Of a stretch of DNA of 64,000 nt, positions 10,189-60,043 are shown one piece after another. Location: assembly GCF_006345805.1 (NCBI RefSeq), contig NC_043017.1, positions 18,972,001 to 19,036,000 of the forward strand, read 5' to 3'. Below the pieces are notes generated by a model, which saw only the letters and a program-made list of their open reading frames with translations, ran no database searches and had not been told where the DNA came from. This DNA is from Octopus sinensis (lineage: Eukaryota). The translations under genes were made by a program, and so were the position numbers. Within the stretch, counting starts at the first letter, position 1. Every line of letters begins with the position of its first letter.

Positions 10189-11304
<1,116 letters not shown>

Positions 11305-24643: not shown

Positions 24644-25813
24644 ATGAATTCTGTGAAAAAACCAGTGAATATTAAAGCTGAGTCTGAAAGCATAGATTTT
24701 CCTAATAAGATGTTAAAAGATTTAGGAAAAACATCATATCACTTTCATGCAGGAGACAAAACATTCTCTGAAAAAAATCAGTTAACTTTTCATACAGGTG
24801 AGAAAGCATATCACTGTAATACCTGTGGTAAATCTTTCTCTTACAAAAATGCATTAACTGTACATGAATGCATTCATTCAGGACAGAAGCCATATACCTG
24901 TAACATCTGTGGTAAATCATTCTCTGGAAGTAATGACTTAAGTACTCACATACGTATCCATACAGGAGAGAAGCCATATCACTGTGATACTTGTGGTAGA
25001 TCATTCTCTCATAGAAATGCTTTAACTGTACACAAACGTATTCATACAGGAGAGAAACCATATCACTGTGATATCTGTGATAAATCCTTCTCCAGAAGTA
25101 GTGAATTAACTACTCACAAACGCATTCATACTGGAGAGAAGCCTTATCAATGTGATATCTGTGATAAATCATTCTCTGTTAGTTGCCACTTAACTACTCA
25201 TAAGCGTAGCCATACAGGAGAGAAGCCATATCACTGTGCTATCTGTGGTTCATCATTTTCTGCAAAAAGTAGCTTAAATACTCATATGCGACTTCATACA
25301 GGAGAGAAGCCATATCTCTGTGATATCTGTGGTAAATCATTTTCTGCAAAGGGTGAATTAACTGTACACACATATATTCATACAGGAGAGAAGCCATATA
25401 CCTGTGATATCTGTGGTAAATCATTATCTGATCCAGGTAACCTAACTAAACACAAACGTATTCACACAGGTGAGAAACCATATCACTGTGATATCTGTGA
25501 CAAATTTTTCTCTGAAAGAAGTTACTTAACTATTCACAAACGTATCCATACAGGAGAGAAACCATATCACTGTGACATATGTAGCAAATCATTCTGTAAA
25601 ATTAGTAACTTAACTAGTCACAAGCGTATTCATACAGGAGAGAGACCATATCGTTGTGACATCTGTAACAAATCATTTTCTCACAGTGGTTCTTTATCTA
25701 ATCACAGGCAAATTCATACAGAACAGAGTCCATATCAGTGTGATATCTGTGGTAAATCATTCTCTAAAAAAGGTCACCTAGCTACACATGTTCGTATTCA
25801 TACAGAAGAATAA
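24644..25813 (+). CDS. C2H2 zinc-finger protein ZNF4 (12 intact fingers plus one degenerate, 389 aa)
   Basis: Twelve intact fingers, largely collinear with ZNF1. The paralogous ATG at 24637 is out of frame, so the start is uncertain. Predicted acceptor ends 24301, donor GT at 23207. Confidence 0.88.
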
Positions 25814-29172: not shown

Positions 29173-29452
29173 ATATATATATGGGGGGGTTAGGGGTGGG
29201 AGAAAAGGGTTTCTGTTATCGTCAGAAATGTAAACAAAGCCACTTACGGGACATATACCGAAGGATCGCCTAATGGCGATGTTTCGTTTGTGATTCAGAA
29301 TGTGAAATTTCTGAAACGTGTCCGAAACGGCAATGAATGATTTTTTTTTTTTAAATAATGAACTGGTATATCAGAATTAGATAGGATATTGCTGTCTGAT
29401 AAATTGCGTCCAAACTTTTGTGGGTGTCTCTCTAAATCTGTGAAACTAAGCT

Positions 29453-29735
29453 CAGGCATGGTGTCTGTGTGGGAAGAAGTTTGGTTCCCAGCTACATGGT
29501 TCTAGGTTCAGTCCCACTGTATGGCATGTTGGGCAAGTGTCTTCTACTAAAGCTTTAGGCTGACCAAAGCCTTGTGAGTGGATTTGCTAGGCAGAAACTA
29601 AATGAAGCCCTTTATATATGTAAGTCTTCCCCTATCACCACTTGACAACCAGTGTTGCTGTGTTTACATCTCCATAACTTAGTGGTTTGGTAAAAGAGAC
29701 CAATAAAATAAGTACCAGGCTTTAAAAAAAGTGCT
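29453..29735 (+). mobile_element. SINE family B, diverged copy
   Basis: GGTTCAGTCCCACTG, GGGCAAGTGTCTTCTACTA and AAGCCTTGTGAGTGGATTTG blocks; a similar copy lies at about 34690-34935. Confidence 0.7.
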
Positions 29736-29769
29736 GGGGTCTGATGTCTGTAATAAGAAAAAAAATAAA

Positions 29770-29916
29770 TGTGAAAATTGGTTGGTGAGAGCTGTACAGA
29801 GATGCTGTCTGTAAAGTGAGGGTTGGCAATGAGTATAGGGAAGAATTACAGGTAGAAGTAGGGGTTCACCAAGGATCAGTCCTCAGCCCCCTTTTATTCA
29901 TCATAGTCCTCCAAGA
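29770..29916 (+). mobile_element. LINE reverse-transcriptase fragment
   Basis: Encodes EVGVHQGSVLSPLLFIIVL. Confidence 0.65.
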
Positions 29917-30377
29917 TTACATGATGTAATTTTTAATTGCAAGTTAAAGTTCTGTTCATCAGGTAAAAATTTGTATTGAACAGTTTATCTACAGAAATTT
30001 CTCATTATTGAATCTCTACTTTTAAGTATTGCTTATTGTTTACACTGTTTCTGTATTGTTTCAGAATATCAGAAGTCTGGCATAAAAGAATATTTTACTT
30101 CACTTCCACCAGAAAACAACTTCTTTTAAAGACCAGAGGAAGACATTGTACAGAAAATAAATGCCCTTCTTTATCTACATCTATGGTGGATTTCCTATGA
30201 AATGTTGGCTCTAAACTGAAATTACTGTCAGAATTTCACTGCGTCACAGTCTGCAATATATACAACACAATCCAATCTTGAATACTAATAAAAACTTGAA
30301 AAGTTTGCAAAGGAGTATGTGGTAACACCAGCTATTGACAAAGATTCCAGTTGATGGCAATATAGCTGTAGAAATAT

Positions 30378-30444
30378 TAGCTTAATTGGTATAGCACTTG
30401 ACCGGTAATCACAGGTATGTGAGTTCAAGTCTCATGGCTGGCTG
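30378..30444 (+). other. tRNA-like sequence (SINE head or tRNA pseudogene) in the predicted ZNF5 5' UTR
   Basis: A-box TAGCTTAATTGG, T-arm GTGAG-TTCAAGT-CTCAT, 3' acceptor strand GGCTGGC; the 5' acceptor strand is missing. Confidence 0.55.
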
Positions 30445-30649
30445 CTGATAAATTTTTCCCTAAAATATAGATATTTCATCCTGTCCCTGCTGTTCTATCA
30501 GCATTTCTGCGTGAGAATAAATCATTTCCTCATCTGTATCTTACAATACATCTCAACACTTCTAAAAGCAAAATATTGTTTGCTTACATTTATCGTAATT
30601 TGATTTTAAAAAACAAAACAAGATAACAAATTGTGAAAGAAGAATAACT

Positions 30650-31603
30650 ATGGAAAATGAAGAATTATGTGAGAAACAGGGTAAATGTGAAACAGAGTCT
30701 GAAAGGATTGATGTTACTACTAATGGGATGTTAAAAGAGAGAAGAAAAACATCTTACCAATGTAATACATGTAAAAAGTCATTCTCTCAGAAATATCATC
30801 TAACAATGCACACACGCGTTCACACAGGGGAGAAACCATATCACTGTGATGTTTGCAGTAAATCATTCTCTCAAAAAGTTCGCTTAACTTTTCATAAAAG
30901 CATTCACACAGGCGAGAAGCCATATCATTGTGATATCTGTGGTAAGTCATTCTCCGAAGGAAGCGTCTTAACTAATCACAAACGTATTCATTCAGGTGAG
31001 AAGCCATACCATTGTGATGTCTGTGGTAAATCATACTTTGTAAGTGCTGACTTGACAGTACACATCCGTATTCATACAGGAGAGAGGCCATATGACTGTG
31101 ATATCTGTGGTAAATCATTCTCTTATAAAAGTTCAATAACTGCTCACAAACGCATTCATGCTGGAGAGAGGCCGCATCAGTGTGATATCTGTGGTAAATC
31201 ATTCTTTGGAAATAGTCAATTAACTGTACACAAACGTACTCATACGGGAGAGAAGCCATATCACTGTGATATCTGTGAGAAATCGTTCTCTCAGACCAGT
31301 AGCTTAACTACTCACAGACGTATTCATACAGGAGAGAAGCCATATCACTGTGATATTTGTGGTAAATCATTCTCTTCAAATAGTAAATTAACTGTTCATA
31401 GACGGATTCATACAGGAGAAAAACCATATCTCTGTGATATCTGTGGTAAATCCTTCTTAGCAAGTGAAAAATTAACAGCACACAAACGCATTCATACAGG
31501 AGAGAAGCCATATACCTGTGATATCTGTAGCAAATCCTTCTCTTCAGCTAGGTATTTAGCCACTCACAAACGTTCTCATACAGGAGAAAAACCATATCAC
31601 TGA
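30650..31603 (+). CDS. C2H2 zinc-finger protein ZNF5 (10 fingers, 317 aa, truncated by frameshift)
   Basis: Ten fingers; ends at TGEKPYH-TGA where CAC TGT GAT has lost 2 nt. Predicted acceptor ends 30064, donor GT at 28147. Confidence 0.9.
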
Positions 31604-34124
31604 TATCTGTGGTAAATCCTTCTTAGCAAGTGAAAAATTAACTGCACACAAACGCATTCATACAGGAAAAAAAATCTTATCATTGTGATGTGGTATTTCG
31701 TTTTCTCATGTAGGTAGCTTAACTAGACACAAATATCTTCATACAGGGGCAAAGCCATTTAACTGACGCTGGTGGTAAATCATTCTCTCAAAAATGTCCC
31801 TTTATTACAATCACTTTGACACAGAAAAGACTATATAACAGTGTACCTTCACCTCACAACACTATATTTTATATAATCACAACTACATTGGTGAGATAAA
31901 TTATAACTGAGATGCTAATAATTATGAGGTTTTTTCTTCCAAAATATAAGCGAAACAAAACTGGTGGATACACACGATAGAAAAACGGAATGGACTAATC
32001 AGGAGCAGATGTGGGTTGGAGAGGTCACAGGATATGTGACAAAAGATTTCACGCAAAGGACACTAAAATAAAAACAATGGTAAAGCTAATAAAAATGTTT
32101 TTTAAATTACCATCCTGAAATATAATATCTGTTTCCACACATGATTTCACATCAGGATTCTTGCAAAACAAATAAACATAAAAATAGGAAAATATGTTCA
32201 TAAATTATTTACAAGATGTAACTAAATAATTTAGGAATAAAGTCTGTTTTCATTTATTCTCTTTGTATTTTGATGTTTTCAACTGTGGAGCTTAGCAATA
32301 GAACACTTGGACAAGGTGTGAATTGTATTTGTGAAGACTCAGTAGATAAGGACCATTTAGTGAAGGCAAGTTGACAATTCTGGTCACAGACTGAAGTAGT
32401 CAAGGTGGATTCATAGAATAACCTCTTAAGAAGGTTTATCAAGAATAAGAGCACAAATTTTTATGAAGATACATTTGGTTTTTGCTAGGTTAGAACTGTT
32501 TAATTAAAAGCACACAGTAGTCTTTAATGTGCTTGGAATAAGAAAGGGCATCCAGCTGTAGAAAGCATGTCAAAACAGACAATTGAAGCCTAGTGCAGCT
32601 CTTGTCCAAAGTGTCCAATCCATGCCAGAATGGAAAATGGACATCAAATGATGATGTCTTCAAATACCTCTAGCACCTTGTATACAAAAATAAACACAAA
32701 GTTCCAAATAACAGGTATGTGTCATACTGTATCATCATTTTTCTGCTGCTTTGTCCCTTAGGTCATCTACATCTCCCCCTCTAACCCAATTCAATTTTTA
32801 CAGTGGTCACTTACCACCCCTCACCCATCTTTCACTCCCCCATACTCATAAAACCTCCACACACCCAGGCTCCTGGACCCTTCTCTCATATTCACGTCTA
32901 TCCACCTCATACCTTGAATGTCCATCCTGACACCACTATCTCTACACCATCAAGGATACTTCCCCATCAGTTAACTTTTATATCATAATTCTATCGAAAT
33001 ACACAGCCTTTGTTTCTATAAATTTTGCGAATAACTTCATCCATCCTAAGCTGGTGTTTGGAACATAAATTAACCTGAAATTTTAGTGGAAGGAATACAG
33101 GCAGGGTGGGTATTATTGATGCTGCTTATTACATCAGGCTTAAACCTTATGTTACCATGTTTTTGCCTTTATTTTAATTAATTTTTAAAATGAGAATTTA
33201 GTAAAATAACTTTCCTTCTGAAGCTGGTGTTTGGAATGTTAACTTACCATGAAATTTTGATGGAAGCTTTTAATGTACATCCCTTCAAACAAGAAATCTG
33301 TATCCAAAAACCAGGGCTGGTCTCAGGTAGGTTGGTATGAAAAGAGTTAAATCTAAAGCAAGGTGTTATTGCATTTTTAAGCAATATTCCTTTACAGCAA
33401 GACATACGTGATGGAACAAGAAATGAAACTGCACTGAAGTGTCAAGAAATAAGGACTCCTACATAAGCAACAGAATTGTAATCTCCCACATCAAGCTCAA
33501 CACTAGCAAAACTAACCTTTCAATCAAGTTGTAACAAGTACAATTTCCTTTAGTTTATTCTATGACTGGCAACAAAACACAAGAACAAATTTTTGACAAA
33601 GAATTTTTCAATTTCAAAATGTGTTCATTGACAGACATCTTTATTTGGAATTTTTAAGTGCAATAACACACCGCAATGTAAAAATTAAAGTAGTGCTTTA
33701 CACTAACCCTTCAGTATTTAAACTGGCCACATCCAGTCCAAAGCATTCTGTTTTATAAGCAAGGTGACTGTCCAGCTTCACACACCTACCCTACAATGTC
33801 ATTCTAAAAATAAACAACCACATCACAGACCTCAAAGCCACAAGGTAAATGCTATATTAATAGATAAGCATTACATTCGACAAAGTTATCTGAATAACAC
33901 TGAGGTATACTGTATTGTTTTTAACACATAACTATAAAAGCATTTTTCTAGGATGGAAACTAGATGCTGCTTTTCAATGATACACCTATATTAAGTGTAT
34001 CATAATACATATCTATCTCCTGTCAAATGTGTCGAGTACTTCATTCCATCACTCCTCGTGTGTGTGTATAATATGTATATATATTTATAAAAGAGAACAA
34101 AGATATAAACAATTATCTTATTAA

Positions 34125-34226
34125 CCTCATTAGCTTACAGCTGTTTCAGTTATAAAATGCAGTTGACTCATAGTTGAGTGCCTGAGTAACACCTTATAAC
34201 TTCATCAGACCCTCAAATATGAAGTG
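34125..34226 (-). ncRNA. Type I hammerhead ribozyme motif
   Basis: CTGATGA (34208-34202), helix II AGTTATAA/TTATAACT, GAAA, self-complementary helix III ACAG/CTGT, triplet GTA (site 34136), helix I with internal loop (CTTCAT/ATGAGG). Confidence 0.7.
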
Positions 34227-34257
34227 TAAATTTTTCTGTTGTTTTCCCAAATAAACT

Positions 34258-34362
34258 GCACTTCATCTCTGAGGCTCTGATGAAGCTACAAGGTGTTACT
34301 CAGGCACTCAGCTATGACTTCACAGCATCTCATAGCAGAAACCACTGTAACCTAATGAAGTT
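34258..34362 (+). ncRNA. Second hammerhead motif, inverted and degenerate
   Basis: CTGATGA 34277-34283, GCTA/TAGC helix II, GAAAC 34338-34342, helix III damaged (ACCACTGT), outer helix I ACTTCAT/ATGAAGT. Confidence 0.55.
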
Positions 34363-34967
34363 CATAATATAATCATTTATTCCTTTGTCATCTCTTTTCT
34401 TATTACTCAACTAACACTTCGTTCAGAAGCATATGAACATTGAGCTCTACACCAGGCTATTAGTCTTGCAAAGCCTGAGCGAAATATATACACATACATA
34501 CATACACATGGTTCAAAAATTGTACAAAAGACAGAAACAGTTGAGGGAAGAGCAAACAAAGTGTAGTAGTTTGACACTCAAGAGAAAGGGAAGAGTTTTT
34601 GATGCTTTGAGCCTGTGCTCTTGCTCAGAAAGAAATGAGGAGAGAAAAAAAATTGTCTGGATTAACGGTTGCACATGTTGAATTCTTTTATATGGTTTAG
34701 CTGTGTGGTAAGAAGCTTGGTTCTGAATCACATGGTTCCAGGTTCAGTCACACTGCATGCCACCTTGGACAAGTGTCTTCTAGTATAGCATTGGGTTGAC
34801 CAAAGCCTTGTGATTGGATTTGATATACAGACACTGAAAGAAGCCCATGGTATATATATATATATGTGTGTGTGTCTGTTTGTCCCCGCCATCACAACCT
34901 ATGTTCGTGTATTTATGTACCATAACTGGTGGCGTTAGGGAGGGCATCCAGCTTTAGAAACCATGCC

Positions 34968-35525
34968 CTTGAATAAGGAAAAAAAGCTTATTCAATCTCA
35001 TTTGAATAAGTTCTTTTTCTTCTTTCATTTTTTTAAAAAATATTTCTGGGGATCATATTTTTACCCTTGTTCCCTTCCAGTATGTCTCTTAATTTGAAAC
35101 TCCCCCTTTACATTAAATATCTCAACCATGAATAAATAAACTGCTCTAACGGTATTTAAACGCAAGTTAATTTACACAATTATAAAAACCCTGTCTTCAT
35201 TGGCAACCACAGTGCGAGCTGCCAGGCTTTGATCATTTATATTCGAGTTTAAATGAGTTAGCTTTTTTTTTATCATTTCTTAATATTCCAAAGATAACAA
35301 TTCTGAAAACAAAAAAGAATAAATAAAATGGAGAATGTTTTTCAAAATTTCAATTTTTAATACTTATGTTCTTTGTTCCTTAACTTTTCCTGTTAAGGTA
35401 TATGGGACAGTCATCTGAAACTGGTGTACTTTCACCTTCATTTTAAATGTCTCATCCTTGAATGAATAAATTATTCTACTTTTAACTCACATGGTACTTA
35501 AATGCATTAAATTTTGGCAATCTTT
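34968..35525 (+). repeat. Segmental duplicate block A (copy at about 40527-41080)
   Basis: Collinear match from AGCTTATTCAATCTC..TTTGAATAAGTTC to GTACTTAAATGCATTAAAT. Confidence 0.85.
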
Positions 35526-36165
35526 CAGTTGTAGCTGCAGACTTGTCCAAAATCACAACTGTTTTGTTTGTTAATTTCTGTAAAGTTTTTTTTATATTTC
35601 TTTAAAGAGAGGAGAAAATGAGAAGGCGATATTTGCTTTGAAGTGAGAGCAGGAAGTTGAAATAGAGAAGGTGAAAAATGTGTTTGTGTATATGAAATGG
35701 ACGTATGTATGTGTGTGTGTGAAAGAGACCGACAGAATAAGTACTAGGCTTACAAAGAATAAGTCCTGGGGTTGATTTCTTCGACTAAAGGTGGTGCTCC
35801 AGCATGGCCGCAGTCAAATGACAAACAAGTAAAAGAGAGTAAGTGCCTCTTTCACATACATGCATGACAACACACCTTTACTTGCTTTCTCACACACACA
35901 CACATACAAAAGAGATGTATGTATATGTATTGATATATATATATACGTGAATATGAAAGATGATGTGTGTGAGAGAGAGAGCGAGTGCCACTTACACATA
36001 TATGCAAAAAGAAAAAAATACAACACACCTTCACTCACTCACACTTTCTCGTTCACAAGCACGCACACGTCCATACATTACTTCAAAGCAAATGTCGCTT
36101 TTTCAATTCTTTGTCTTGCAATTTCTGCTGTTCAAAGTAAATGGTCGCCTTCCAAAATATAAGTG

Positions 36166-37023
36166 TAGGAATGTTACCCGCCGATCGGGGTTGTATGGAT
36201 TTACTGACCCATTAGCAGCTTCATCTTAGAAAATAAGTCCCTACCCTCTCACTCATTCAGTAACTTATTGCACAGGCAAATTATGAAAATATTTGAACAG
36301 CTGTTTTACAAATACGGAGATTTATATGAATTTTCAAAAGAGAGAAGTGTTAAATTTACAAATAAAAAGGCGATTCGAAGCTGCCAGCAAATATTTTAAA
36401 ATCAACAATTTCGTGAACGTTTCAAGTTAAGCGGCGAAGCCACTAGAGCATCTAAATGCAGTTATTGCCGTCAAGACGTTAAATGAAATTTGGCAGAATT
36501 ACGTTTCCCGGCGAAAGTGAAGAACACGTACACCCGCCGGTTAGGATTTGAGTATTTGTTACGCCGAAAACGGGTGGTGTACGTATTCTTTACCTCCGTC
36601 CGTTTTCCAAGGTGCAGATAGCGATTATGTTGATAAAATCTAATCTTTTTTCAGTCCAAGTGCAAATAACTCCCTCATAGCCATCGTATATGTATTCAGT
36701 TATGAAACTATCGATTTTGTATTATAATAGTGTAAAACTAAATTGGGGACTTATTTCATCTAGCTTTCCAACCACAAATATAGGATATTCAAAAATATCT
36801 GGCAAACCTTAGGGATGACCAACGAAAAGCTTCCATGGTCCTTGTCGCCATTTCCCCACAAAAACCATTATAGCTAACGATTATCCAAGACAATACGGAA
36901 GAATGATCTAAAAAACGAGCTCATACAAAATCGCGTATTGAAGTCGATTCATATACAATCAAAACTAGTTCATGGCCCTTTAAAAGCTTCTCAAAAGTCA
37001 TTTACTTTTTGGTAGCTTTCTTC
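36166..37023 (+). repeat. Segmental duplicate block B, H1 3' flank (copy at about 43228-43973)
   Basis: Collinear from AATGTTACCCGCCGATC; 36620-37023 is near-identical to 43572-43973 including the H1 stop codon. Confidence 0.88.
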
Positions 37024-37536
37024 GCTGTTAGTTTCTTGACGGGTTTCTGCTTCTTCACATTCTTCGCTGGCTTCTTCGGGTTTGACTACACTGGATTTTG
37101 CGGGAGAGTTGGCAGACTTCAATGCTGCCTTCTTAGGTGTCGCCGGTTTGTTTTTCACAGTACCAGACATTTTAGCGACTTTCGCAGGCTCGCGTTTTAT
37201 ATCCAAATCTTCGGTGATAATGGACTGAACCGAACCGTAACTAATGTTCACATCCTTTGATAACTTACGGATGGTGATTTTTCGATTTCTCTTCAAAGCT
37301 TCAAGCACATCTGCGATGTTTTTATTCGTTCTGCTGGTTGCGGGTCTCCCTGACCGTTCATCACTATCCACACTTCTCCGGCCATATTGGAAACGTCTGT
37401 ACCAATCGTAGACTTGTGTGCGGCTCATACACTCCTCTCCGTAAACTATCTGCAACTTTGCGTAGGTCTCTAGGCAGGTATCGCCAAGCCTTTGGCAAAA
37501 TTTGATGCAGATTCTCTGCTCGACTTTCTCTGACAT
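36991..37536 (-). CDS. Chimeric ORF: mariner transposase N-terminal HTH domains fused to a histone H1 tail (181 aa)
   Basis: aa 1-115 are mariner-like (EQRICIKFC...VYGEECMSRTQVYDWYRRF..GR..V..DERSGRP...RKITIRKLS..VNISYGSVQSIITEDL). aa ~116-153 align in DNA to the H1 tail at 44290-44410. aa 154-181 are a frameshifted Glu-rich tail. The ORF is open; expression is unknown. Confidence 0.6.
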   Translation of the reverse strand: MSEKVEQRICIKFCQRLGDTCLETYAKLQIVYGEECMSRTQVYDWYRRFQYGRRSVDSDERSGRPATSRTNKNIADVLEALKRNRKITIRKLSKDVNISYGSVQSIITEDLDIKREPAKVAKMSGTVKNKPATPKKAALKSANSPAKSSVVKPEEASEECEEAETRQETNSEESYQKVNDF

Positions 37537-37733
37537 GGTTAATGCGACAAATACACGCTAAACACTTAAGATTCCCAAGAACTACTGTAAACAACGGAAG
37601 TGAGCTAGAATGTAAAAACTTAGTGCGCATGCACAGCAGATTATAAAGTCTCTCAGGTGCCGAGCGGCTTCACTCTGCGTGCTTTATCTTCGTTACCATG
37701 ACAACGGTCATGTTGCTTATTGATCACACCACG
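37192..37733 (-). mobile_element. 5' half of a mariner transposon (left TIR, leader, DNA-binding domain)
   Basis: Minus strand begins TA|CGTGGTGTGATCAATAAG at 37735-37716; catalytic domain and right TIR are absent. Confidence 0.85.
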
Positions 37734-39344
37734 TAAAAAGATTACGTTGGATCAATGATTTGACTGAATTTAATGTACTACCAATAAACACAATGGCCAT
37801 TCAACCGAAAGCCAATAGTTTGTTCAGTGATTCTCAGAGAAAAGGAAGATGCATCTTCTCATTAACAAAATTTGGTTTGAAAGTTTTAAGAGATGCCTTC
37901 ATTTGCACAACGTTAAAATGACTACTGAAGCTATCACTGTCAATCCGGAGATTGCTATAAAACATCCTGAAGAACTGGCGAAAATGACGGTTCTAAGTAT
38001 TCTATGCACAAGAATAAGTAATGAAAGTTGATTTTTTCCCCCCAGGGTGTGTTTTTCTGCCTGGACTTTTGAGTAGAGAGAAAATTAGAACCAGGCTTTA
38101 ACACTTCAAAAACATCCCCTGATGCTAATTGTGGAAGAAAATGTAGTAATATGAAATTAAAGCACTTAGTTATGGTGCTTTTATTTCATAATGCTTACTA
38201 AAATCCAACATCTTTTAAAGGCTTTCATAAGATTAATATATCTGTGATTTAGTGTTCAAACATGGTTGGCTGGCCACAAACCATTACCGAGACAGGTTTG
38301 CACACTTTATAGAGAAGCGCAATGCCAGGCACAATTTTCCAACTAAGTATTACTCCTTTTACACAATGCACAAAGCCACTTAATAAACTCATATAATCAT
38401 TTTTTTGATAAGGCAAAGTACAATTTCTCAAAAACACATCTTTGCTCCAAACAATTGATGGATAGCTAACTACAAGGCATATTATTTTGATAGCTTAATG
38501 AGGAGGATAAAACTGAAGTTAGAGACCTCTGGGAAGAATTCAAATTTGATGGTGATGTAAATAAGTTATAGGATAAAATGAAATCCTCAATCATGAAAGT
38601 TGCTTGAGAAAACATACAGCCAAACTGTATCTATGAATTTATAGGTTTTAAAGCAGGAGAACAGAAGAAAGATTACATCAAATTCAACAAAATACACAGG
38701 CAAATGAAGTCACAGATGATGTAATTCAGTTGCTAGAGAGAGAGAGAGAGCGGTTTCACTTAATGGTGAACTGATAAGATATGTTTTGAGCCTAGGTCAT
38801 AATGTGCTCAGTTCATACACTGAGCCATACAAAAAGATGGGGTATGAAGTCTGTCAAACAACTTCGGATAAGTTCTTAACATGGTTGGGAAATGCTGGGG
38901 TACAAATATATGAAGCCCAGCATAACCATTATACTCATCTGATAAGGGTACATGAAGCATATGCATCACAACCAAATTTATGCAATATGGTGACCTCATA
39001 TCAAGGTAAACAGTGCATAAAAATTCTAACTGGGCTTCAACTTGCAGGTGGAGTTAGAATTTTCTTCAGGTCGAGTAGCCCATACTACTACAAAGGTGCC
39101 TGAATAAGGGTTGTTTAAGGAGAGTGAATGAAATACCCATGTTTACAGCAGTGAATTATTGAAACCCCAAAGAATTCCTCTCAACACTTGGCTTTGATGC
39201 TCCCCCACTACTGCTCATGAACAGAGATGCACATATTGTCATGCACTAAGGTACATGCTCAATCAGCTATGGTCAAGTAAGTCACAAGTAAATCTGTGGT
39301 ATTGAGCAGAAAATTTGCTGTATCCTGTATTTTATACCAAGAGA

Positions 39345-39710
39345 AAACATCTAGATGAAGATCGTCGTGTGTCTATAAAAAAGACAATAAGTACATAGTT
39401 TGGAGTTGATAAGGCAACTGAGCACAGAATTATTCATGAAGATCTGTATATAATGTAAAATTTGGGCAGTTTGTTCCCAGGGTGCTCAGTGACAAGTGTT
39501 CTTGTAACTGACAGAGATAGGCACCAAAACACTTTCACCATTCCTATGGTCCAGGCCTAGCTCCTTTTGACATTTTGTTCGCTAAGCTGAAGAACATCAG
39601 GGACAGTCGCTTTGAAGATGAATGAGGCTGTAACAAGGGTCCAGGACACCTTCACTTTGCAGGCTTTCTATTGGACTTCAAAAAGTGGCTGGAATGTACC
39701 TTGTGTTATC
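39345..39710 (+). mobile_element. Degenerate mariner remnant
   Basis: EDRRVSIK...HRIIHEDL...FVPRVLSD-like frameshifted translation. Confidence 0.5.
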
Positions 39711-42700
39711 TCGCCGAGTTCAAATCCCACTGAAGTCAACTTTGCCTTTCGTTGTTCCAGGGTTAATAAAATGAAGTAACACTCAAGCACTGGGGTCAAT
39801 ACAATCCAATTCTCACATATACATGCAATTTCTGGCCTTGTGCTGATTAGAAAGAACTATACCTGCATTGATTGATTAATAGCTCGTATTTTAAACGCAT
39901 TTCAATATCAACAAGAGGGCGAACAATAAAACTATGTTATTGTAAAGTTATCCAAATTACCCGTTTCTAAATTCCAATTTTTAAAAGTCGAAGGTACAGA
40001 ATACGCACACCCCGTGTTTACACTTAGGGTTACCTTCGAAAACGTGAATGGGCATCATCATCATCATTTAACGTCCGTTCTCCATGCTAGCATGGGTTGG
40101 GCGGTTCGACCGGGGATCTGGGAAGCCAGAAGCCCTTCCTAACGCCAAAGCAGAGGTAAAGAATGCGTACTCCACCCGTTTTCGGTCTAACAAAAACCCA
40201 AACCTTATTCCTAAAACCGGGCGTACGTATTTTTCACTTTCGCAAGTAAGCGTATTCTTTATCTCCGCCTTTTAAAAAAATATTTTTGCCCTTTGTTTCC
40301 TAACGTTTTCCTTGGGGTAAGGGCTCTTCTATATCCACCCACCTTATTCTAAATTCCCTTCGCTCTTGAATAAGGTGTTTGCTTTGTCTTTAAATATCGT
40401 GAGAATGATTTTCATTCTCACGATATTTAAATGCAAATTTACTGACAGATAAATCCCATCATTGACAACGAAAATGCAAAAATTAGGCCAACAAATTAGT
40501 ACTAATTATGTTAGCATTAAAATAAAATGGAAAAGAGCTTATTCAATCTCGTTTGAATAAGTTCTTTTCTTTTCTTTTCATTAAAAAAAAATATTTCTGG
40601 AGATCATATTTTCCCCTTCGTTCCCTTCGAATATGGCACTCTTAATTTGAAATTCCCCTTTACTTTAAATATCTCAATCTTGATTAGACAAACTGTTCTT
40701 ACGGTATTTAAACGCAGGTTAATTTACACAAGCAATTATAAAATCTCTTCGTTGGTGACCACAGCGTGAACTGTCAGACATTGATTGTTTATATTCGAGT
40801 TCAAATGAGTTCTTTTTTTTATTTCTTAATATTCGAAGAGAGATTACAATTCTGAAAAGAATAAAATAGAGAATATTTTTCAAATTTCAATTTTTAATGT
40901 ATGTGTTCTTTGTTCCTAAACTTTTCCCGTTAAGGTATATGGGAGATTTATCCAAAAGGATGACTGTCCCATATACAAAGGAGGTACCTCCACCTCCATT
41001 TTAAATGTCTCGTCCTTGAATGAATTAACTATTATACTTTTAACTCACACAGTACTTAAATGCATTAAATATTTCAATGTTTTAATTTAGACTCAGTAGC
41101 AAAACCGTCTTCGTTAGCAAAACGACAATGAGAAAGTTTATTGTTCGGCGCGAATTTCATTTCCCACCCAACAAGGTTTTCTTTTCAATAACGTGGGAAA
41201 ATAACCGATTGAATTTGGCGGTCGTTTTTTTTTTTTCTGTTACATTATTCAAATAGTAACATTTTTAATCGTAATTGGCACACAGTAACAAGAACTCAAC
41301 ATTGTCCTGCATTCTAGTAGAAACAAGACTAAATTTCGTTCGATAGGACCATAGCAATTTTATAAATTGAAGAAATAAATATCACTACACATTACTATTG
41401 TATCGGGTAGGGAAAAAACCCTGAACTTACAGCATTTAATCTATTAAATAAGAGATACTTGAATCCCCGGATGGTAAATTTAAACAGGTTGAAAGCGATC
41501 TTAAAACAGGAGGATACCTGTTGCTTTATGTTCACAACTTTTTTTTTTTACAGTACTCATCGTTATAAATACATTTCAGTGCCCCACGAGCTACGTTCCC
41601 GAATAACTTTTTTCTAGAAATGTTTTCATGGGTCTACGTTGCGGTTATGTTGAGATACGATATTTCCCCCCTATTATTTAGAAAACAATCCATGCCTTTT
41701 CATAAGTAGAATAATAGTATAACAACAGTTTAGTGCCACCAGTTATCTCACAATTTTAATAGTATGTATTTTCTAGTGGAAATTCACACAAATGTTTTTG
41801 TATGTGTTTATCACGAACATGTTAATGAATCTTTTTTTCTCTTTAGAAAAAAGTTCATTTTCACGTATTAACTTGCACTTGTAAAAGTACTCAGTTACAA
41901 AAGCATCTCGAAAAGCGTAAATTACACAATATTTCAAGCAAAACTGAATTAGATGGGAAAATGCTGCATTTACGAAAACGGTGATTAACGAAGTCAGGGA
42001 CTAGGAAAAGAAATAATGATCCAGAACTCATTTCAGATAGCTTTTTTTTCAAAAATCTACACCCCTGTAAAATTTAGTTTAAAAAAATACATGCATTAGT
42101 CAGCAAATGATGAAGCAAAGTCGCTGGAGGCACTAAACTTTAGTTGTATCGATCTGTTATCTCAGATCGGAGTTATAATTTGCAGAGAATTCACAACCGA
42201 GACATTCAGATCTCTGGTCAGTCCCTTTGGTCAAATCTATTCTAAGCTATCATCGAATACAAATAGAATTGCAATTTGAAGGGAGATGAGCTGCTGGTTT
42301 TAGCCGACTTTTTTTTATTTTGATAACAGCTAGCCACATTGAGATGGCTAGTACACTTTACGTTGTCGAGCTTAGAACTGTTATGAACAAACTGCAGTCC
42401 GTAGGACTTTCTGAATAGCAAGCAACGAAAAATTACCTTTCATTCTTTTATAGTTTGGCTGTTCTGATGAGGAACCATATCTCATGCAGCACACTTTTCG
42501 AAAAATGCTGCCCATTACTGGCTTAAAATGTAAATGAGGACAAGATTTCACCAGCATACTCTACACTCTTGGAAACGTACCTCAGCAAAATTTTAAAAAA
42601 AACATGCATTAATATAACTAAACATCTAAGAGGCCCACTTCCCGTTTAAAATACAAATCCGCCAGCAACAGCCGGAATTTGTGAGTGGTTGGTAACCAGT

Positions 42701-44168
42701 GTCAAAAAAGGCGGGCAAGATTCCTAGACTTGTAGGTATGTCGCCTGCCTTGCAGATAAGATTATAATAACTTATTGAAAATAGAAAATTCACTCACGAC
42801 AAATGAAACTGCGAGACATGTTTAGGTCAGCCTCATTGGTCAAACCTATCTTGCCATGACCATCGAATGTAGGTAAAATTGTTAGTAATTTGAAGGAAGT
42901 TGTGCTGCTGTTTCTAGCAGACCGAGTGGCAGGTTAACAGGTTACACGATGATAAAACGAAAACCACTTCAAAAACTTGAGTGTGGGGTCACTGCGTTTA
43001 CTTTTCAGGCCAATTCTATGGCTTGCATTTCTTAAAGATTCTTGAATGCTCCACTGATAATTTCAACCAGACAGGATTGTCAGTTTAGTGCCCTTTCTTT
43101 TAATAAAGCAATTTTTAAATGAAATAGAACATATTTCGAAGGCGTTGACGAAATTTTCCTTCTATGCACAAATATTCAGTCATGTTGAACTACAGACACC
43201 TTGCGAATACGTCAAGTGTATAAAAAAATGGAAATGTTACCCGCCGATCAGGGTTGTATGTATTTATTGAACAAACAACATCCTAGTCCCTACCCTCTCA
43301 CCCATTTAGTAACATATTGCACATGCAAATGTGCAATATGTTCAAAACTATTTGAACTATTTGAACAGGTGTCTAACAAAGATCTTCAAAGAAATGCTAA
43401 ATTTACGGAAAATGGTTATAAAAAGACGGTTCGAAACTCACTGCAAAATTTTAAATATCTACTTCGAAAACGTTTCAAGTTAAGCGGGAAAGATACTGGT
43501 GCATCTAAATGCAGTTATTGCCAAGGCCTTAAATAGAATTTCGCAAAAATACGTTTTCTAAAATGTAGATAAGCGATTATGTGGATAAAAATCTGATCTT
43601 TTTTCAGTCCTAGTGCAATAACTCCCTCATAGCCATCGTATATGTATTCAGTTATGAAACTACCGATTTTGTATTATAATAGTGTAAAACTAAATTGGGG
43701 GCTTCTTTCATCTAGCCTTCCAACCACAAATATAGGATATTCAAAAATATCTGGTAAACCTTAGGGATGACCAACGAAAAGCTTCCATGGGCCTTTTCGC
43801 CATTTCCCCACAAAAACCATTATAGCTAACGATTATCCAAGACAATACGGAAGAATGATCTAAAAAAACGAGCTCATACAAAATCGCGTATTGAAGTCGA
43901 TTCATATACAATCAAAACTAGTTCATGGCCCTTTAAAAGATTCTCAAAAATCATTTACTTTTTGGTAGCTTTCGTCTAGCCTTCCAACCTCAAATACAAG
44001 GTACTAATAAAAAATTCTTGCAAACCTTAGGGATAACCAACGAAAAGTTTTAAAGGCCCTTGCCGCCATTTCTTCAGGAAACCGTTATATTTAACGATTG
44101 ATCTAAAAAACGAACTCACACAAAATCGCGTATTGAAGTCGATTCATATACGATCAGAACTTGTTGAT

Positions 44169-44184
44169 GGCCCTAAAAAGGGCC
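44169..44184 (-). terminator. Histone 3' stem-loop of H1a
   Basis: Minus strand GGCCCT-TTTT-AGGGCC, 24 nt after the stop codon. Confidence 0.92.
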
Positions 44185-44208
44185 CTTTAAAAGCTTTTCA
44201 AAAATAAT

Positions 44209-44754
44209 TTACTTTTTGGAAGCTTTCTTTGTAGTTGGTTTCTTGACGGGTTTCTGCTTCTTCGCTACCTTCTTCACTGGCTTCTTGGCGCCAGCCTTTT
44301 TGGGCTTGACTACCCTGGCTTTAGCGGGTTTGGCAGACTTTGATGCTGCTTTCTTAGGTTTCGCCGCTTTGGTCTTAGCAGGCTTTTTGCTGACCTTGGC
44401 GGGCTTCTTTACCTTCTTCTGTTTCTTGTCAGCTTTGGCTTCAGCCTTGCGGAGTTTGAAAGAACCGCTGGCACCAACACCTTTAGTTTGAGTAAGAGTG
44501 CGCTTCAGAACACCTTGTCTCAGAGTAAGTTTGATGTTACCGTTGATCCGGGGAGTATTGTTTCCAACTTTGTAATTGGCGGTAATGTACTTCTTGATAG
44601 CAACTTTAGACGAACCACCTTTTTGATTCAGGGATTTGATAGCGCTGGCAACCATCTCGCTGTATTTGGGATGGCTAGGAGGAGCCTTAGGCTTAGTAGA
44701 CTTGGCTTTGGCCGGTTTAGTAGTGTCTTTGGCTGGTTTAGTAGAGTCGCTCAT
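44209..44754 (-). CDS. H1: Linker histone H1 (H1a, 181 aa)
   Basis: Globular domain HPKYSEMVASAI...GGSSKVAIKKYI...QTKGVGASGSFKL, K/A/P-rich tail, intronless, TATA box and stem-loop. Confidence 0.96.
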   Translation of the reverse strand: MSDSTKPAKDTTKPAKAKSTKPKAPPSHPKYSEMVASAIKSLNQKGGSSKVAIKKYITANYKVGNNTPRINGNIKLTLRQGVLKRTLTQTKGVGASGSFKLRKAEAKADKKQKKVKKPAKVSKKPAKTKAAKPKKAASKSAKPAKARVVKPKKAGAKKPVKKVAKKQKPVKKPTTKKASKK

Positions 44755-46799: not shown

Positions 46800-48610
46800 T
46801 TAATAATCTCTGTCTTGTCTTCTTGTCTTGAGACAGCATTCACCCGGGGTGGGTTGAGCTGGCTTCATTCATCCTCGATGCTGCATCACTCACAAACGCC
46901 GACCAATCCTGGCGATTTGAGGCTAACCACCGCGTGATCTCCAACCACTCCTTATTCCAGGTTTTTCGTTGTCCACCACATCGCTTTCGCCAAACCTGAA
47001 GGGGAGCTGGGGAAATTGCTTCGTAGATGAATTCTCCTGGTTGACGACGGAGGGCATGACCCAGCCAAAGCAGACGTCTCGTTAGGATGACTTGTCGGAT
47101 AATCTCTGTAGGGTATTTGAAGAGAGATCTAAGTGCTATTTCTGGACTACTGAAGGATTAAGTTAGTTTCTATTGTTCTCAGAGTCCTAACCTTAACCTG
47201 AACTACTATAGCCAATTTTACTTCAAATGCAAACGTGAACATACGGGGTGGTGTGGTATGGTGGTGTTGGGGTGTGGGGAAGCAATGCTGGGGTGTAAGG
47301 GATAGAGTGGAGTGGGATAAGATGTAGAGGGACAGTGGGGTTGGAATGTATAGGAGTGGGGTAACGAGGGAGGGGGTGTCGATGAAAGGAGAGGGTGCAA
47401 GGGAGAAGGTGGATAGGAAAGAAGAGGGGAAATAGGTATCATGGCAAGAGAGGAGAGGTGGGTGGGAGGAAGTAGGTAAGAGAGGAGAGTGGAGGAGGGT
47501 TAGATGAAGAGGGGAGCAGAGTTGAGCCCATATGGCGCAAAGGAGCGAAGAGAAGATTAATCTCTGTTCGTGATGAAGACGGGAGTTCGGATGGCCCCTG
47601 TGCAAGGATAACCCGAACAGAGAAAGGTGTTTTAAACAATGACCGGTAGAGCGGAAATGGCGCAAGACCGGGATGTCGTTGCCGAGTCTGATGTCTCGGA
47701 GGTGTTCCGCGAACCAGTCAGTCAAGCGGCGTCCCGTTTGACCGATGTATAGAGAAGGACAGAGAGAGCAGTAGATACAGTAGATGACGTTGCTGGAAGT
47801 GCAGGTGAAGGAGTCAGTGATATGATAGGGTCGATGGTGGGTGCCTGTGAGGAGGGTGGTGTTGGAGAGATAGGGGCAAGTGTGGAAGCCTGGGCGGGAG
47901 CAGGGGAACGAGCTGGGTTGGGAGGTTGCATTAGGGAAGAAGCTGTGGATCAAGAGGTCTCGTAGGTTGCGGGCTCGTTTCACGGAGGGTAGAGGTCGGT
48001 TAAGGAAGATGTGCGAAGTGAAGGGTTTGGACTGGAGTCGCCGGAAGGCTCGGAGAATGGTGCGTTGGAGAGGTAGGATGGTGGAGAGATAGGTGAGGGA
48101 GAAACGGGAGATGAGTGACGGTGGGGCGGGGGTAGAGAGCGGATGCACGTTTCACGGAAGTGCTCTGGTAACGGCGGTGTGGATGGTGGTAAGCCATGAG
48201 TTGAGACTGAGTCTCAAAGTCATGGTCACTGCAGAGCCTGCGTGGACAGAGGAGTTGGGAATAGGAGATGGAGAGCTTGGTGTGTTTAGGGTGGGGGAGG
48301 AGAAGTTGAGGTATGAATGTGAGTCTGTGTGTTTGTAGTGGATGGAGGTGGTGAGAGTGTAGAGATGAATGCTGACCGAAATGTCGAGAAAGGCGACTGA
48401 AGTGTCGGAAATAGTGCAGGGAAAGTGGCGGGCAGGATGGAAAGATTTGACAAAAAAGAGGAAGGAGTCTAGATGTTTGCGGGAAAGTGAGGTCGCACCG
48501 ATACAGTCGTCAATATAACGACCGTATAGTTCGGGAGTGGGACCAGTGAAACTTGACAATATTTGGGCCTCAACGTAGCCAACGAACAGGTTCGCATAGT
48601 TGGGGCCCAT
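46800..48610 (-). mobile_element. 5'-truncated Penelope-like retroelement (RT plus GIY-YIG)
   Basis: MGPNYANLF...YGRYIDDCIG...FLDISV...YKHTDSHSYL, then VIYCIYCSLCPSLYIGQTGRRL...EH; frameshifted. Confidence 0.88.
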
Positions 48611-51150: not shown

Positions 51151-51411
51151 TGTGTGTGTGTGTGTGTGGGTGGGAGGGTGTATGGAAACTGTAGTTGTGG
51201 CCGATCCCAGTGCCATGTGACTGGCTCCCCATACCAGCCCCGACTGGCTCCCGTGCTGGGGGCATGTAAAAAGCACCCACTACACTCTTGGAGTGGTTGG
51301 TGTTAGGAAGGGCATCTAGGTGTAGAAACATTGCCAGATCAGATTGGGGCTTGGTGCCACCTCCTGGCTTGCCAGTTCCCAGTATGGAAAACGGACATTA
51401 AATGATGATGA

Positions 51412-52608
<1,197 letters not shown>

Positions 52609-53723: not shown

Positions 53724-53810
<87 letters not shown>

Positions 53811-54438
53811 CTAGATAGATATCTTTTATCTTCTACTTGTTTTAGTGATTGGCTATGTGTGATGCATACAGGGTAGAGACTTTGGTAATGTTCTTCATTT
53901 TGTTTCCTCATAACTTTCAGAGAAACTGGGATTTGTTCATGAATTTTTTCTTTTACAAATACCTTTCAGTTGATGTCGATTGGGATCATATCAAAATTAC
54001 GCATGAAAAACAATGACTGCTGGGTGCGCGGACATACAAACTGGTTTACATCATATATATACATTTACAAAAGGAAATTTAAAACTTCGAAAAAATTCCG
54101 AGATATGTTAGTATGTGAGCACACCCACCTATTTCCTCCTATCTTTTTTTTTTTTTGCACGTTAAATTCCGAAATAATCGTAATCTACACCATCTGAAAA
54201 ATATTTGTAGAAATTTTTATCATAAAATATGCATTTTTTGGAAAGTTATGAAGACACAAATTCGGCAGGGGTGGGCACTATATGTACAAATGCTAGCAAG
54301 ATCACCGTAGGGACTAGCATCATACGTAAAGACACATGCTCTAAAGTTAGAAAATGAAAAATACTGAAAATAAAATACGTTACTTTTACTTCATGTGTGA
54401 TCGTATATTTAAGATTCATATTCTTTAATTTATTCAAG

Positions 54439-59994: not shown

Positions 59995-60027
59995 ATTGAG
60001 CAAGCGTTTTATTTTCCACAACTCAAA

Positions 60028-60043
60028 GGCCCTTTTTAGGGCC
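60028..60043 (+). terminator. Histone 3' stem-loop of H1b
   Basis: GGCCCT-TTTT-AGGGCC, 33 nt after the stop codon. Confidence 0.92.

What the first reader, a model, noticed from the sequence alone, without database searches (positions are those of the whole stretch)
36991..37735. Open chimeric gene: mariner DNA-binding domain fused to a linker-histone H1 tail
Seen: a mariner left end (TA + TIR, leader, ATG) runs into an uninterrupted 181-codon ORF. About 115 codons encode the two transposase HTH domains. At the point where the WVPxxL-type linker and DDD domain should begin (TEDLDIKR), the DNA switches to sequence that aligns with the tail and stop codon of H1a 7 kb away. The junction peptide KREPAKV resembles both sides (transposase xRRVxAKFVP, H1 KKPAKV), which hints at microhomology. 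Established: hosts have domesticated mariner DNA-binding domains by fusion (SETMAR), and the HTH pair binds cognate TIRs. Inference: a young TE-histone fusion that could bring an H1-derived module to dispersed mariner TIRs and MITEs. I know of no described transposase-H1 fusion. It may equally be a neutral deletion product.
Basis: partly seen in the sequence, partly recalled or inferred. Interest (0 to 1): 0.85.

Follow-up and report, generated by a model that had tools for sequence, protein, structure and literature searches.

The report
Truncated mariner joined to H1 pseudogene
In the Octopus sinensis genome, the front end of a broken mariner transposon is joined to the decayed, frameshifted tail of a duplicated histone H1 gene. 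The result is a real 181-codon open reading frame that looks like a gene fusion but carries nothing that could act as histone H1, and it is most likely genomic debris.

Summary
The sequence observation largely holds. ORF 36991-37536 (-) is open for 181 codons. Residues 1-116 are a mariner paired helix-turn-helix DNA-binding domain behind a left TIR and leader. At 37180-37190 the DNA switches to sequence homologous to the H1a tail and its 3' flank.

Three corrections change the meaning:
- **Decayed donor.** The H1 part is only 80% identical to H1a. It comes from a separate, decayed H1 copy (H1psi) that has lost half of its 3' stem-loop.
- **Frameshift.** A 17-nt deletion puts the last 24 codons out of the H1 frame. 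The acidic EECEEAETRQ... end is a frameshift product, and the stop is not the H1 stop.
- **No H1 features.** There is no globular domain. The tail's net charge is about 0, against +29 for the same stretch of H1a.

The window is Octopus sinensis CM016879.1. RefSeq already models this locus as 'protein GVQW3' (XP_029648964.1), starting at Met37 and spliced at the old H1 stop. That form would lack most of the first HTH.

No right TIR, no catalytic domain and no orthologue were found, and no test of selection was informative. The best reading is a neutral, microhomology-mediated deletion product in a decaying tandem H1 array. A role as a TIR-binding repressor is not excluded but is unlikely.

The parts
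37706..37735 (-). Mariner left end: TA dinucleotide (37734-37735) plus a 28-nt terminal inverted repeat, CGTGGTGTGATCAATAAGCAACATGACC.
   Evidence: Read directly. It is the only copy in the window even when 3 mismatches in 28 nt or 6 in 24 nt are allowed, so no right TIR is present.
37537..37705 (-). Mariner 5' leader. Together with the TIR it contains three out-of-frame upstream ATGs (37711, 37699, 37630). The last opens an 88-codon ORF that overlaps the main start.
   Evidence: Aligns with the leaders of mariner relatives L002 and L003. Upstream ATG scan.
37189..37536 (-). Mariner-derived coding part, residues 1-116: HTH1 (residues 3-50, 37387-37530), the SGRP linker (residues 62-65) and HTH2 (residues 71-110, 37207-37326).
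   Evidence: Pfam HTH_48. PDB SETMAR DBD and Mos1. AF2 helices 3-16, 21-35, 39-50, 71-83, 89-96 and 100-110. Foldseek. Colinear without indels with relatives P0002-P0005. tblastn with full-length relatives stops at 37174-37177.
37180..37190 (-). Junction zone between mariner and H1psi, with imperfect microhomology (CCTGCGAAA).
   Evidence: Three-way comparison of alignments A1 and A2. GCGAG upstream is mariner-specific and GTC downstream is H1-specific.
37066..37188 (-). H1psi tail still read in the H1 frame (residues 117-157, PAKVAKMSGTVKNKPATPKKAALKSANSPAKSSVVKPEEAS).
   Evidence: tblastn places H1a residues 116-154 on 37194-37069, in frame with the ORF. Alignment A1.
36991..37065 (-). H1psi tail read out of frame after a 17-nt deletion (residues 158-181, acidic), plus the TGA stop (36991-36993). 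The former H1 TAA lies at 37002-37004. The GTAAAT at 37000-37005 is the splice donor implied by the RefSeq CDS.
   Evidence: Alignment A1. tblastn places H1a residues 151-181 on 37094-37005 in another frame. The +1 frame of H1a reproduces the peptide. Comparison with the P0001 sequence.
36601..36990 (-). 3' flank of H1psi. The stem-loop remnant (about 36970-36985) lacks the 5' arm because of a 12-nt deletion. No AATAAA or ATTAAA follows for 1.6 kb.
   Evidence: A1. Rfam Histone3 matches H1a (27.1 bits, E=5.8e-6) but nothing here at E up to 10. Poly(A)-signal scan.
35273..35302 (-). Last coding exon of the RefSeq model XP_029648964.1 (NCYLWNIKK*). It lies in a dispersed repeat (34980-35525, similar to 40531-41082).
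   Evidence: L001 is identical to the window. Gene span 37428-35273. The acceptor TTTTCAG|AATTGT was read directly.
44145..44754 (-). H1a: an intact linker-histone gene (CDS 44209-44754) with a 3' stem-loop (44145-44189). It is the reference paralogue, not the donor.
   Evidence: Pfam Linker_histone E=4e-26. Rfam Histone3.
43552..43976 (-). copyB: the last roughly 30 nt of an H1psi-type CDS plus its 3' flank, abutting H1a's own flank. It is 96% identical to 36601-37023 and shares the stem-loop deletion.
   Evidence: blastn. Alignment A1. Identity counts.

Best explanation
This is a by-product of decay, not a working fusion gene.

**Origin.** The octopus once had a small tandem array of linker-histone H1 units on the minus strand: H1a, a unit now reduced to copyB, and a third unit, H1psi. 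A mariner element sat upstream of H1psi. A single deletion then joined the mariner, just after its second helix-turn-helix, to the H1psi tail. It removed the mariner linker, catalytic domain and right end, and also the H1psi promoter, N-terminal tail and globular domain. The deletion could be end-joining at a short microhomology, or a flanking deletion made during repair of a mariner excision.

**Why the ORF is open.** The join happened to be in frame, which is a 1-in-3 chance. The H1 tail is poor in T, so it stays free of stops even after a 17-nt deletion shifted the frame. That gives a 181-codon ORF.

**What a product would be.** If made, the protein would be a mariner DNA-binding domain followed by 65 disordered residues of about zero net charge. 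It would have no H1 activity.

**Shown and inferred.**
- Shown: the anatomy, the frameshift, the loss of the stem-loop, the absence of H1 features, and the RefSeq model.
- Inferred: the order of events, the deletion mechanism and the lack of function.
For: - **Mariner part is a 5' fragment only.** There is no right TIR in the 64 kb. There is no transposase catalytic-domain similarity next to it and no Transposase_1 Pfam match.
- **The upstream flank (37736 onward) is not H1.** tblastn with H1a and H1b at E up to 10 finds nothing there, and blastn finds nothing either. This rules out a simple insertion of the mariner into H1.
- **The H1 part is decayed.** It is 80% identical to H1a in the former CDS and 85% in the flank. 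It carries a 17-nt frameshifting deletion and a 12-nt deletion of the stem-loop.
- **The tail is not H1-like.** There is no Linker_histone domain. Tail charge is about +7 then -7, against +29 for H1a (with the frame boundary). The tail is disordered.
- **The tail peptide is unique to this locus.** No protein among 1.84 billion representatives shares it except the locus's own RefSeq model.
- **A decaying tandem array is visible.** copyB, flank2 and a further block are colinear between the two loci.
- **No 3'-end signal.** There is no canonical 3'-end signal for the unspliced ORF, and there are three out-of-frame upstream ATGs.
- **The RefSeq CDS drops residues 1-36**, which form helices 1-2 of HTH1.
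- **Truncated HTH-only mariner ORFs are common.** Other genomes hold them under the routine name 'GVQW3-like' (P0006, P0007, P0009). The nearest relative, P0002, even has a fortuitous Lys-rich tail.
- **No orthologue or second copy is on record**.
Against: - The mariner-derived 116 codons have no stop, frameshift or indel against relatives.
- The invariant W45, R64 and P65 are kept.
- The fold is predicted with high confidence.
- RefSeq predicts a spliced protein-coding gene here, which may reflect transcript evidence that I could not see.
- dN/dS against distant relatives is 0.23-0.28, and about 0.42 on the fusion branch. This does not demonstrate neutrality.
- Absence of orthologues was tested only at the level of predicted proteins, not genome DNA.
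Confidence: 0.8

Rival explanations
1. This is a young lineage-specific gene. The retained mariner HTH pair binds cognate TIRs or MITEs and acts as a truncated-transposase repressor or regulator. The ex-H1 tail serves only as a disordered C-terminal extension.
For: - The HTH1, SGRP linker and HTH2 are intact and confidently folded, and resemble the SETMAR DBD/TIR complex.
- A spliced RefSeq model exists.
- Domestication of DNA-binding modules alone from Tc1/mariner is documented in Drosophila (PMC13548663).
Against: - The RefSeq CDS starts at Met37 and lacks helices 1-2 of HTH1.
- The left TIR is retained, and there are out-of-frame upstream ATGs.
- No orthologue or paralogue is on record.
- No cognate TIR lies elsewhere in the 64 kb.
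- The locus fails the published criteria that separate domesticated genes from debris, namely synteny, orthology and expression (PMC13548663), or those criteria could not be tested here.
Confidence: 0.1
2. One reading: a transposase-H1 fusion that brings an H1-like chromatin-compacting module to mariner TIRs.
For: The DNA downstream of the junction is truly H1-derived. Thirty-seven of the residues in the H1 frame are moderately basic (9 Lys).
Against: - There is no globular domain.
- The last 24 residues are an acidic out-of-frame product, and the tail's net charge is about 0 against +29 in H1a.
- The ex-CDS is no more conserved than the flank.
- The spliced RefSeq form replaces the end with unrelated residues.
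Confidence: 0.02
3. The junction is an assembly artefact caused by the 96% identical repeat shared with the H1a locus.
For: A 425-bp block (36601-37023) is 96% identical to 43552-43976. Raw reads could not be inspected.
Against: - The mariner/H1psi junction (37180-37190) lies about 160 nt outside that block.
- The intervening DNA (37024-37185) is only about 80% like H1a and is otherwise unique in the window. Collapsing the repeat cannot create the junction.
- The same sequence underlies the GenBank record and the RefSeq annotation.
Confidence: 0.03

Closest known systems
RefSeq 'protein GVQW3 / GVQW3-like' models (truncated mariner N-terminal ORFs in invertebrate genomes)
   Same: This locus is itself annotated as protein GVQW3 (XP_029648964.1). 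Similar HTH-only ORFs of 118-121 residues are annotated in bees and in O. bimaculoides (P0006, P0007, P0009).
   Different: Here the C-terminal extension comes from an H1 pseudogene tail rather than from random flanking or internal transposon DNA. The annotation does not record that origin.
SETMAR (Metnase), the primate SET-Hsmar1 fusion
   Same: A mariner paired-HTH DNA-binding domain inside a chimeric ORF. The SETMAR DBD bound to its TIR (7s03) is the best match by both sequence and structure.
   Different: From established knowledge, SETMAR keeps a functional host domain (SET) at the N-terminus and the whole transposase at the C-terminus. It arose by exon capture and splicing, and it is conserved under purifying selection in anthropoids. 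Here the transposase fragment is N-terminal, the host part is a frameshifted pseudogene remnant, and no conservation is known.
Domesticated Tc1/mariner DNA-binding-module genes (Drosophila CG4570, cag; PMC13548663) and host-transposase fusions (bioRxiv 10.1101/2020.05.07.082677, listed)
   Same: Only the DNA-binding module of the transposase is retained.
   Different: Those genes have lost their TIRs, have syntenic orthologues, and show expression and purifying selection. This locus keeps a TIR, and none of the other criteria could be shown.
Histone H1 pseudogene in a decaying tandem histone array
   Same: The H1-derived part has a frameshift, has lost its stem-loop and is truncated. A sister remnant (copyB) lies next to the intact H1a.
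   Different: The remnant is joined in frame to a transposon ORF, which gives it a start codon.
Truncated-transposase repressors (P-element KP protein; dominant-negative mariner transposase fragments). Cited from my own knowledge, not tested here.
   Same: An N-terminal DNA-binding fragment without the catalytic domain could compete for TIRs.
   Different: There is no evidence here of expression, of cognate active elements or of repression.

Membership tests
mariner (Tc1/mariner) transposon, complete element | Two terminal inverted repeats flanked by a TA duplication | tested here: not met
   Only the left TA+TIR is present (37706-37735). No second copy exists in the 64 kb with up to 6 mismatches in 24 nt.
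mariner (Tc1/mariner) transposon, complete element | N-terminal paired HTH DNA-binding domain (HTH_48 type) | tested here: met
   Pfam HTH_48 at E=7e-8, above the curated cut-off. SETMAR and Mos1 by sequence and by fold.
mariner (Tc1/mariner) transposon, complete element | DD(34)D catalytic domain (Pfam Transposase_1) | tested here: not met
   No Transposase_1 hit. tblastn with relatives that carry the catalytic region matches only residues 1-121, at 37536-37174.
linker histone H1 | Winged-helix globular domain (PF00538) | tested here: not met
   The domain is absent from the ORF. It is present in H1a (E=4e-26) and H1b (E=2.9e-27). No H1 globular similarity lies upstream of the mariner end.
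linker histone H1 | Strongly Lys-rich C-terminal tail | tested here: not met
   Net charge is about 0 over 65 residues, against +29 in the equivalent part of H1a. The last 24 residues are out of frame.
linker histone H1 | Replication-dependent 3' stem-loop | tested here: not met
   Rfam Histone3 matches H1a (27.1 bits, E=5.8e-6; below the 34-bit gathering score) and gives no hit in 36850-37050 at E up to 10. A 12-nt deletion is visible in A1.
domesticated transposase / host-transposase fusion gene | Syntenic orthologues in related species | not testable with these tools
   No octopus genome DNA other than this record is searchable here. At the protein level, the 90% cluster of the RefSeq model has one member, and the next hit is 74% identical and from another locus. 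The exact ORF is not on record.
domesticated transposase / host-transposase fusion gene | Purifying selection after the fusion | tested here: inconclusive
   dN/dS is 0.23-0.28 against relatives with dS of 0.5-0.7. The fusion branch has 10 synonymous and 16 non-synonymous changes (about 0.42). These branches mostly record evolution as a transposon. The ex-H1 CDS is no more conserved than the flank.
domesticated transposase / host-transposase fusion gene | Loss of transposon ends | tested here: not met
   The left TA+TIR and leader are retained intact.
domesticated transposase / host-transposase fusion gene | Expression as a stable mRNA and protein | not testable with these tools
   Only a Gnomon model exists (XP_029648964.1), and its supporting evidence is not visible here. 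The unspliced ORF has no stem-loop and no AATAAA or ATTAAA for 1.6 kb.
domesticated transposase / host-transposase fusion gene | Functional host-derived domain | tested here: not met
   The host part is a frameshifted, disordered remnant with no Pfam domain.

The most novel reading that the evidence does not exclude
This is a very recently born, Octopus sinensis-lineage gene. A mariner paired-HTH domain has gained a new basic-then-acidic disordered tail from a frameshifted H1 pseudogene, and a splice donor from the old H1 stop codon. It is expressed, and it binds cognate mariner TIRs or MITEs as a repressor or regulator. That would be gene birth from two pieces of junk caught at an early stage.
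Probability: 0.06. Interest if true: 0.5.

Novelty: new member of a known kind. Interest (0 to 1): 0.15.

Why it matters
As it stands, this is mainly a caution. It is a clean worked example of two dead coding sequences, a 5' transposon fragment and a histone pseudogene tail, forming a long open and annotated 'gene'. Lys-rich tails are poor in T, so they stay open in more than one frame. It also shows that RefSeq 'GVQW3' models in invertebrates can hide chimeric debris. If the low-probability alternative were true, this would be an unusually early snapshot of transposase DNA-binding-domain domestication in a cephalopod. It would still not be an H1-function fusion.

Tried and rejected
- **Mariner inserted into an H1 gene.** Rejected: the DNA upstream of the left TIR has no H1 similarity by tblastn at E up to 10 or by blastn.
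- **Internally deleted but complete element (MITE-like) with H1 filler DNA.** Rejected for this window, because no right TIR exists.
- **The acidic end reflects A-to-G (Lys-to-Glu) changes or a real acidic-tailed H1 variant.** Mostly rejected. It is the +1 frame of the H1 tail. Only two true Lys-to-Glu codon changes precede the deletion (A1). No protein with this tail exists among 1.84 billion representatives.
- **Upstream flank 37760-38031 as a pogo/Tigger-like fragment (a guess from memory).** No Pfam support, so dropped.
- **Rfam at gathering threshold on the whole window.** It missed the histone stem-loops. Local E-value searches were needed.
- **dN/dS against the nearest available relatives.** Uninformative, because they are too distant.
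- **Exact-sequence look-up of the 181-residue ORF in public assemblies.** Nothing found.
- **Identifying run SRR8281669, the source of the closest mariner relative, from the literature.** Nothing found.
- **Literature searches for a described transposase-H1 fusion.** Nothing found.
- **ORFs at 47150-48610 that looked retroelement-like.** No Pfam match.
Full report
**Identity of the window**

The nearest protein to the ORF is a 150-residue RefSeq model, 'protein GVQW3 [Octopus sinensis]' (XP_029648964.1, UniRef A0A6P7TD09). The DNA around that gene was fetched from GCA_006345805.1 chromosome CM016879.1. It is base-for-base identical to window 29273-43428. The window is therefore octopus nuclear DNA. 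It has about 36% G+C and a + strand cluster of C2H2 zinc-finger ORFs. It also holds two intact linker-histone genes, H1a at 44209-44754 (-) and H1b at 59464-59994 (+).

**What is at 36991-37735**

The minus strand carries, in order:
- TA plus a 28-nt mariner-type TIR (37706-37735);
- a 199-nt leader;
- an ATG ORF of 181 codons (37536 down to 36991).

Residues 1-116 are a mariner DNA-binding domain:
- Pfam HTH_48, the 'HTH domain in Mos1 transposase', scores above its curated cut-off (E=7e-8).
- The best solved relatives by sequence are the SETMAR DNA-binding domain (7s03, E=1.4e-6) and Mos1.
- An AlphaFold2 model built on 17 homologues gives two three-helix bundles (residues 3-50 and 71-110) at pLDDT of about 90 or more.
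- The top Foldseek matches are the SETMAR DBD/TIR complex and Mos1 transpososomes.
- This part is colinear, without indels, with mariner relatives. It keeps the invariant W45, R64 and P65.

Nothing else of the transposon is present. No Transposase_1 domain was found. There is no catalytic-domain similarity next to it, and no right TIR anywhere in the 64 kb.

**The H1-derived part**

From about 37190 downwards, the DNA is homologous to the H1a tail and continues into H1a's 3' flank (36754-37150 against 43970-44371, E=4e-83). Alignment with the DNA of two mariner relatives (L002, L003) and with H1a puts the switch inside 37180-37190. The fusion reads CCTGCGAAA there, the mariner relative TCTGCCAAA and H1a CCCGCCAAG. 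That is an imperfect microhomology.

Three points change the meaning.

- **H1a is not the donor.** The ex-coding DNA is 80% identical to H1a, and the flank is 85% identical. A third H1-type remnant, 'copyB' (43552-43976), lies directly after H1a's own flank. It keeps only the last roughly 30 nt of a CDS plus flank, and it is 96% identical to the fusion's 36601-37023. Further colinear blocks, 76-78% identical, follow in both loci. This looks like a decaying tandem array of H1 units: H1a, copyB and the unit fused to the mariner (H1psi).
- **The H1 frame is broken.** Against H1a, H1psi has +6, +3 and -17 nt indels. tblastn places H1a residues 116-154 in the ORF's frame but residues 151-181 in another frame. 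Reading the H1a tail in its +1 frame gives ...EEAETRQETNYKESFQKVNYF*. That is the fusion's C-terminus, EECEEAETRQETNSEESYQKVNDF*. Only residues 117-157 are in the H1 frame. The acidic end is a frameshift product. The former H1 TAA (37002-37004) is read through to a TGA 8 nt further on.
- **The gene-end signal is gone.** H1a has the histone 3' stem-loop GGCCCTTTTTAGGGCC (Rfam Histone3, 27.1 bits, E=5.8e-6), and H1b has the same motif. H1psi and copyB share a 12-nt deletion that removes its 5' arm, and nothing matches Histone3 there. No AATAAA or ATTAAA follows for 1.6 kb.

**Is there any H1 module?**

No.
- The globular Linker_histone domain is absent.
- The in-frame stretch has 9 Lys and 2 Glu in 41 residues. 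The out-of-frame 24 residues are strongly acidic. The 65-residue tail therefore has a net charge of about 0, against +29 for the same part of H1a.
- The tail is predicted to be disordered (pLDDT below 56).
- A HMMER search of the tail alone against 1.84 billion representative proteins returned only the locus's own RefSeq model and one low-complexity hit. No genuine H1 variant with such a tail is known.

**Is the open frame remarkable?**

Not really. Of the three forward frames through the H1-derived 195 nt, exactly one is free of stops. An in-frame join therefore had about a 1-in-3 chance. After the 17-nt deletion, the new frame stays open because the Lys-rich tail is only 9-15% T on the sense strand, and the same frame is open in H1a. 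The closest mariner relative found (P0002/L002, from a Logan assembly) is also truncated just after HTH2. It runs into A-rich DNA that translates as KKKKNSKKKKIKK. HTH-only mariner ORFs are routinely annotated as 'GVQW3-like' in bees and in O. bimaculoides. Such ORFs are common debris.

**How it arose (inferred)**

The DNA upstream of the left TIR has no H1 similarity. The mariner therefore did not simply insert into H1psi. The simplest history is a mariner copy lying upstream of H1psi, followed by one deletion. That deletion ran from just after HTH2 to codon ~117 of H1psi and was joined at the short microhomology. A flanking deletion during repair of a mariner excision would give the same structure. 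The order of the frameshift and the fusion cannot be determined. In either order, the tail shows no sign of constraint.

**Is it a gene?**

RefSeq's model starts at Met37 (37428). It uses the GTAAAT formed by the old H1 stop codon (AAG TAA AT) as a splice donor after 37006. It ends in a 9-codon exon at 35273-35302, inside a dispersed repeat. That form lacks helices 1-2 of HTH1. The leader upstream of Met1 has three out-of-frame ATGs, one of which opens an 88-codon overlapping ORF. I could not see what evidence supports the model.

The other tests gave the following:
- dN/dS against the only available relatives is 0.23-0.28, and about 0.42 on the fusion branch. These relatives are distant (dS 0.5-0.7), so the test says nothing about the time since the fusion.
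- No orthologue or second copy is on record at the protein level. Other octopus genomes could not be searched as DNA.
[quoted passage not shown] This locus fails the criterion that can be tested, because it retains a TIR. It is untested on the others.

**Comparison with known systems, and verdict**

The DNA-binding domain works like that of SETMAR or Mos1. The locus is not a member of the class of established host-transposase fusions. It is not an H1, and it is not a complete mariner (see the membership table). My literature searches found no described transposase-H1 fusion, and this locus is not a convincing first case.

The most likely reading is a neutral chimeric ORF made from a 5' mariner fragment and a frameshifted H1 pseudogene tail. 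I put that at about 0.8. A residual possibility of about 0.06-0.1 is a young HTH-only TIR-binding protein whose tail is incidental. Interest is low (0.15).

Noticed in passing
window 44145-44754 (-) and 59464-60043 (+): Two intact, divergent linker-histone genes (46% identical to each other), each with a 3' stem-loop GGCCCTTTTTAGGGCC. They sit as solitary genes inside a + strand cluster of C2H2 zinc-finger ORFs (3648-4775, 10219-11304, 14675-16207, 24644-25813, 30650-31603).
   Followed up: partly
window 43552-43976 vs 36601-37023: A 425-bp block (end of an H1 CDS plus its 3' flank) is 96% identical between the two loci. The colinear neighbouring DNA is only 76-78% identical (36170-36506 vs 43233-43556; 34980-35525 vs 40531-41082). 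This suggests a recent gene-conversion tract within an old tandem duplication. The junction of copyB with H1a's flank also sits at a short GA(C/A)GAAAG match.
   Followed up: partly
window 36503-36598 and 40153-40258: A roughly 95-bp element with 31-nt inverted-repeat arms (MITE-like) is present in the fusion locus but absent from the paralogous position in the H1a locus. A second copy, 78-81% identical, lies 3.6 kb away in inverted orientation.
   Followed up: partly
window 37000-37005, 44203-44211, 59989-59997: The H1 stop context AAG-TAA-AT creates a GTAAAT splice-donor-like hexamer in all three H1 copies. The RefSeq model uses it as a real donor in the pseudogene copy.
   Followed up: partly
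window 55844-56032 (+): A weak similarity to the C-terminal region of a mariner transposase (tblastn with P0004 residues 162-223, E=7.5e-4). It is probably an unrelated second mariner remnant.
   Followed up: no
window 53018-53911 (-), 51316-52760, 47147-48610 (-): A retroelement ORF with a zf-RVT domain (E=3.8e-8). Beside it is a long tandem repeat that translates as SIYLSIYL in several frames. Two ORFs of 333 and 152 residues have no Pfam match.
   Followed up: partly
window 30378-30435 (+): A borderline tRNA-like match (29.1 bits against a gathering score of 29) lies about 200 nt upstream of a zinc-finger ORF. It may be a SINE head or a chance match.
   Followed up: no
L002 1-1010 (Logan SRR8281669) and L003 (soil metagenome): The two nearest mariner relatives share about 25 nt (AAGTTAAAT..CGAAGGTG) upstream of the position that aligns with the fusion's TA+TIR. 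The exact 5' terminus of this mariner family is therefore not settled, and the fusion copy might lack a few terminal bases.
   Followed up: no
window 34089-34396: A large hairpin-forming inverted repeat with 147-nt arms, 79% complementary and separated by 14 nt. It lies downstream of the RefSeq terminal exon.
   Followed up: no
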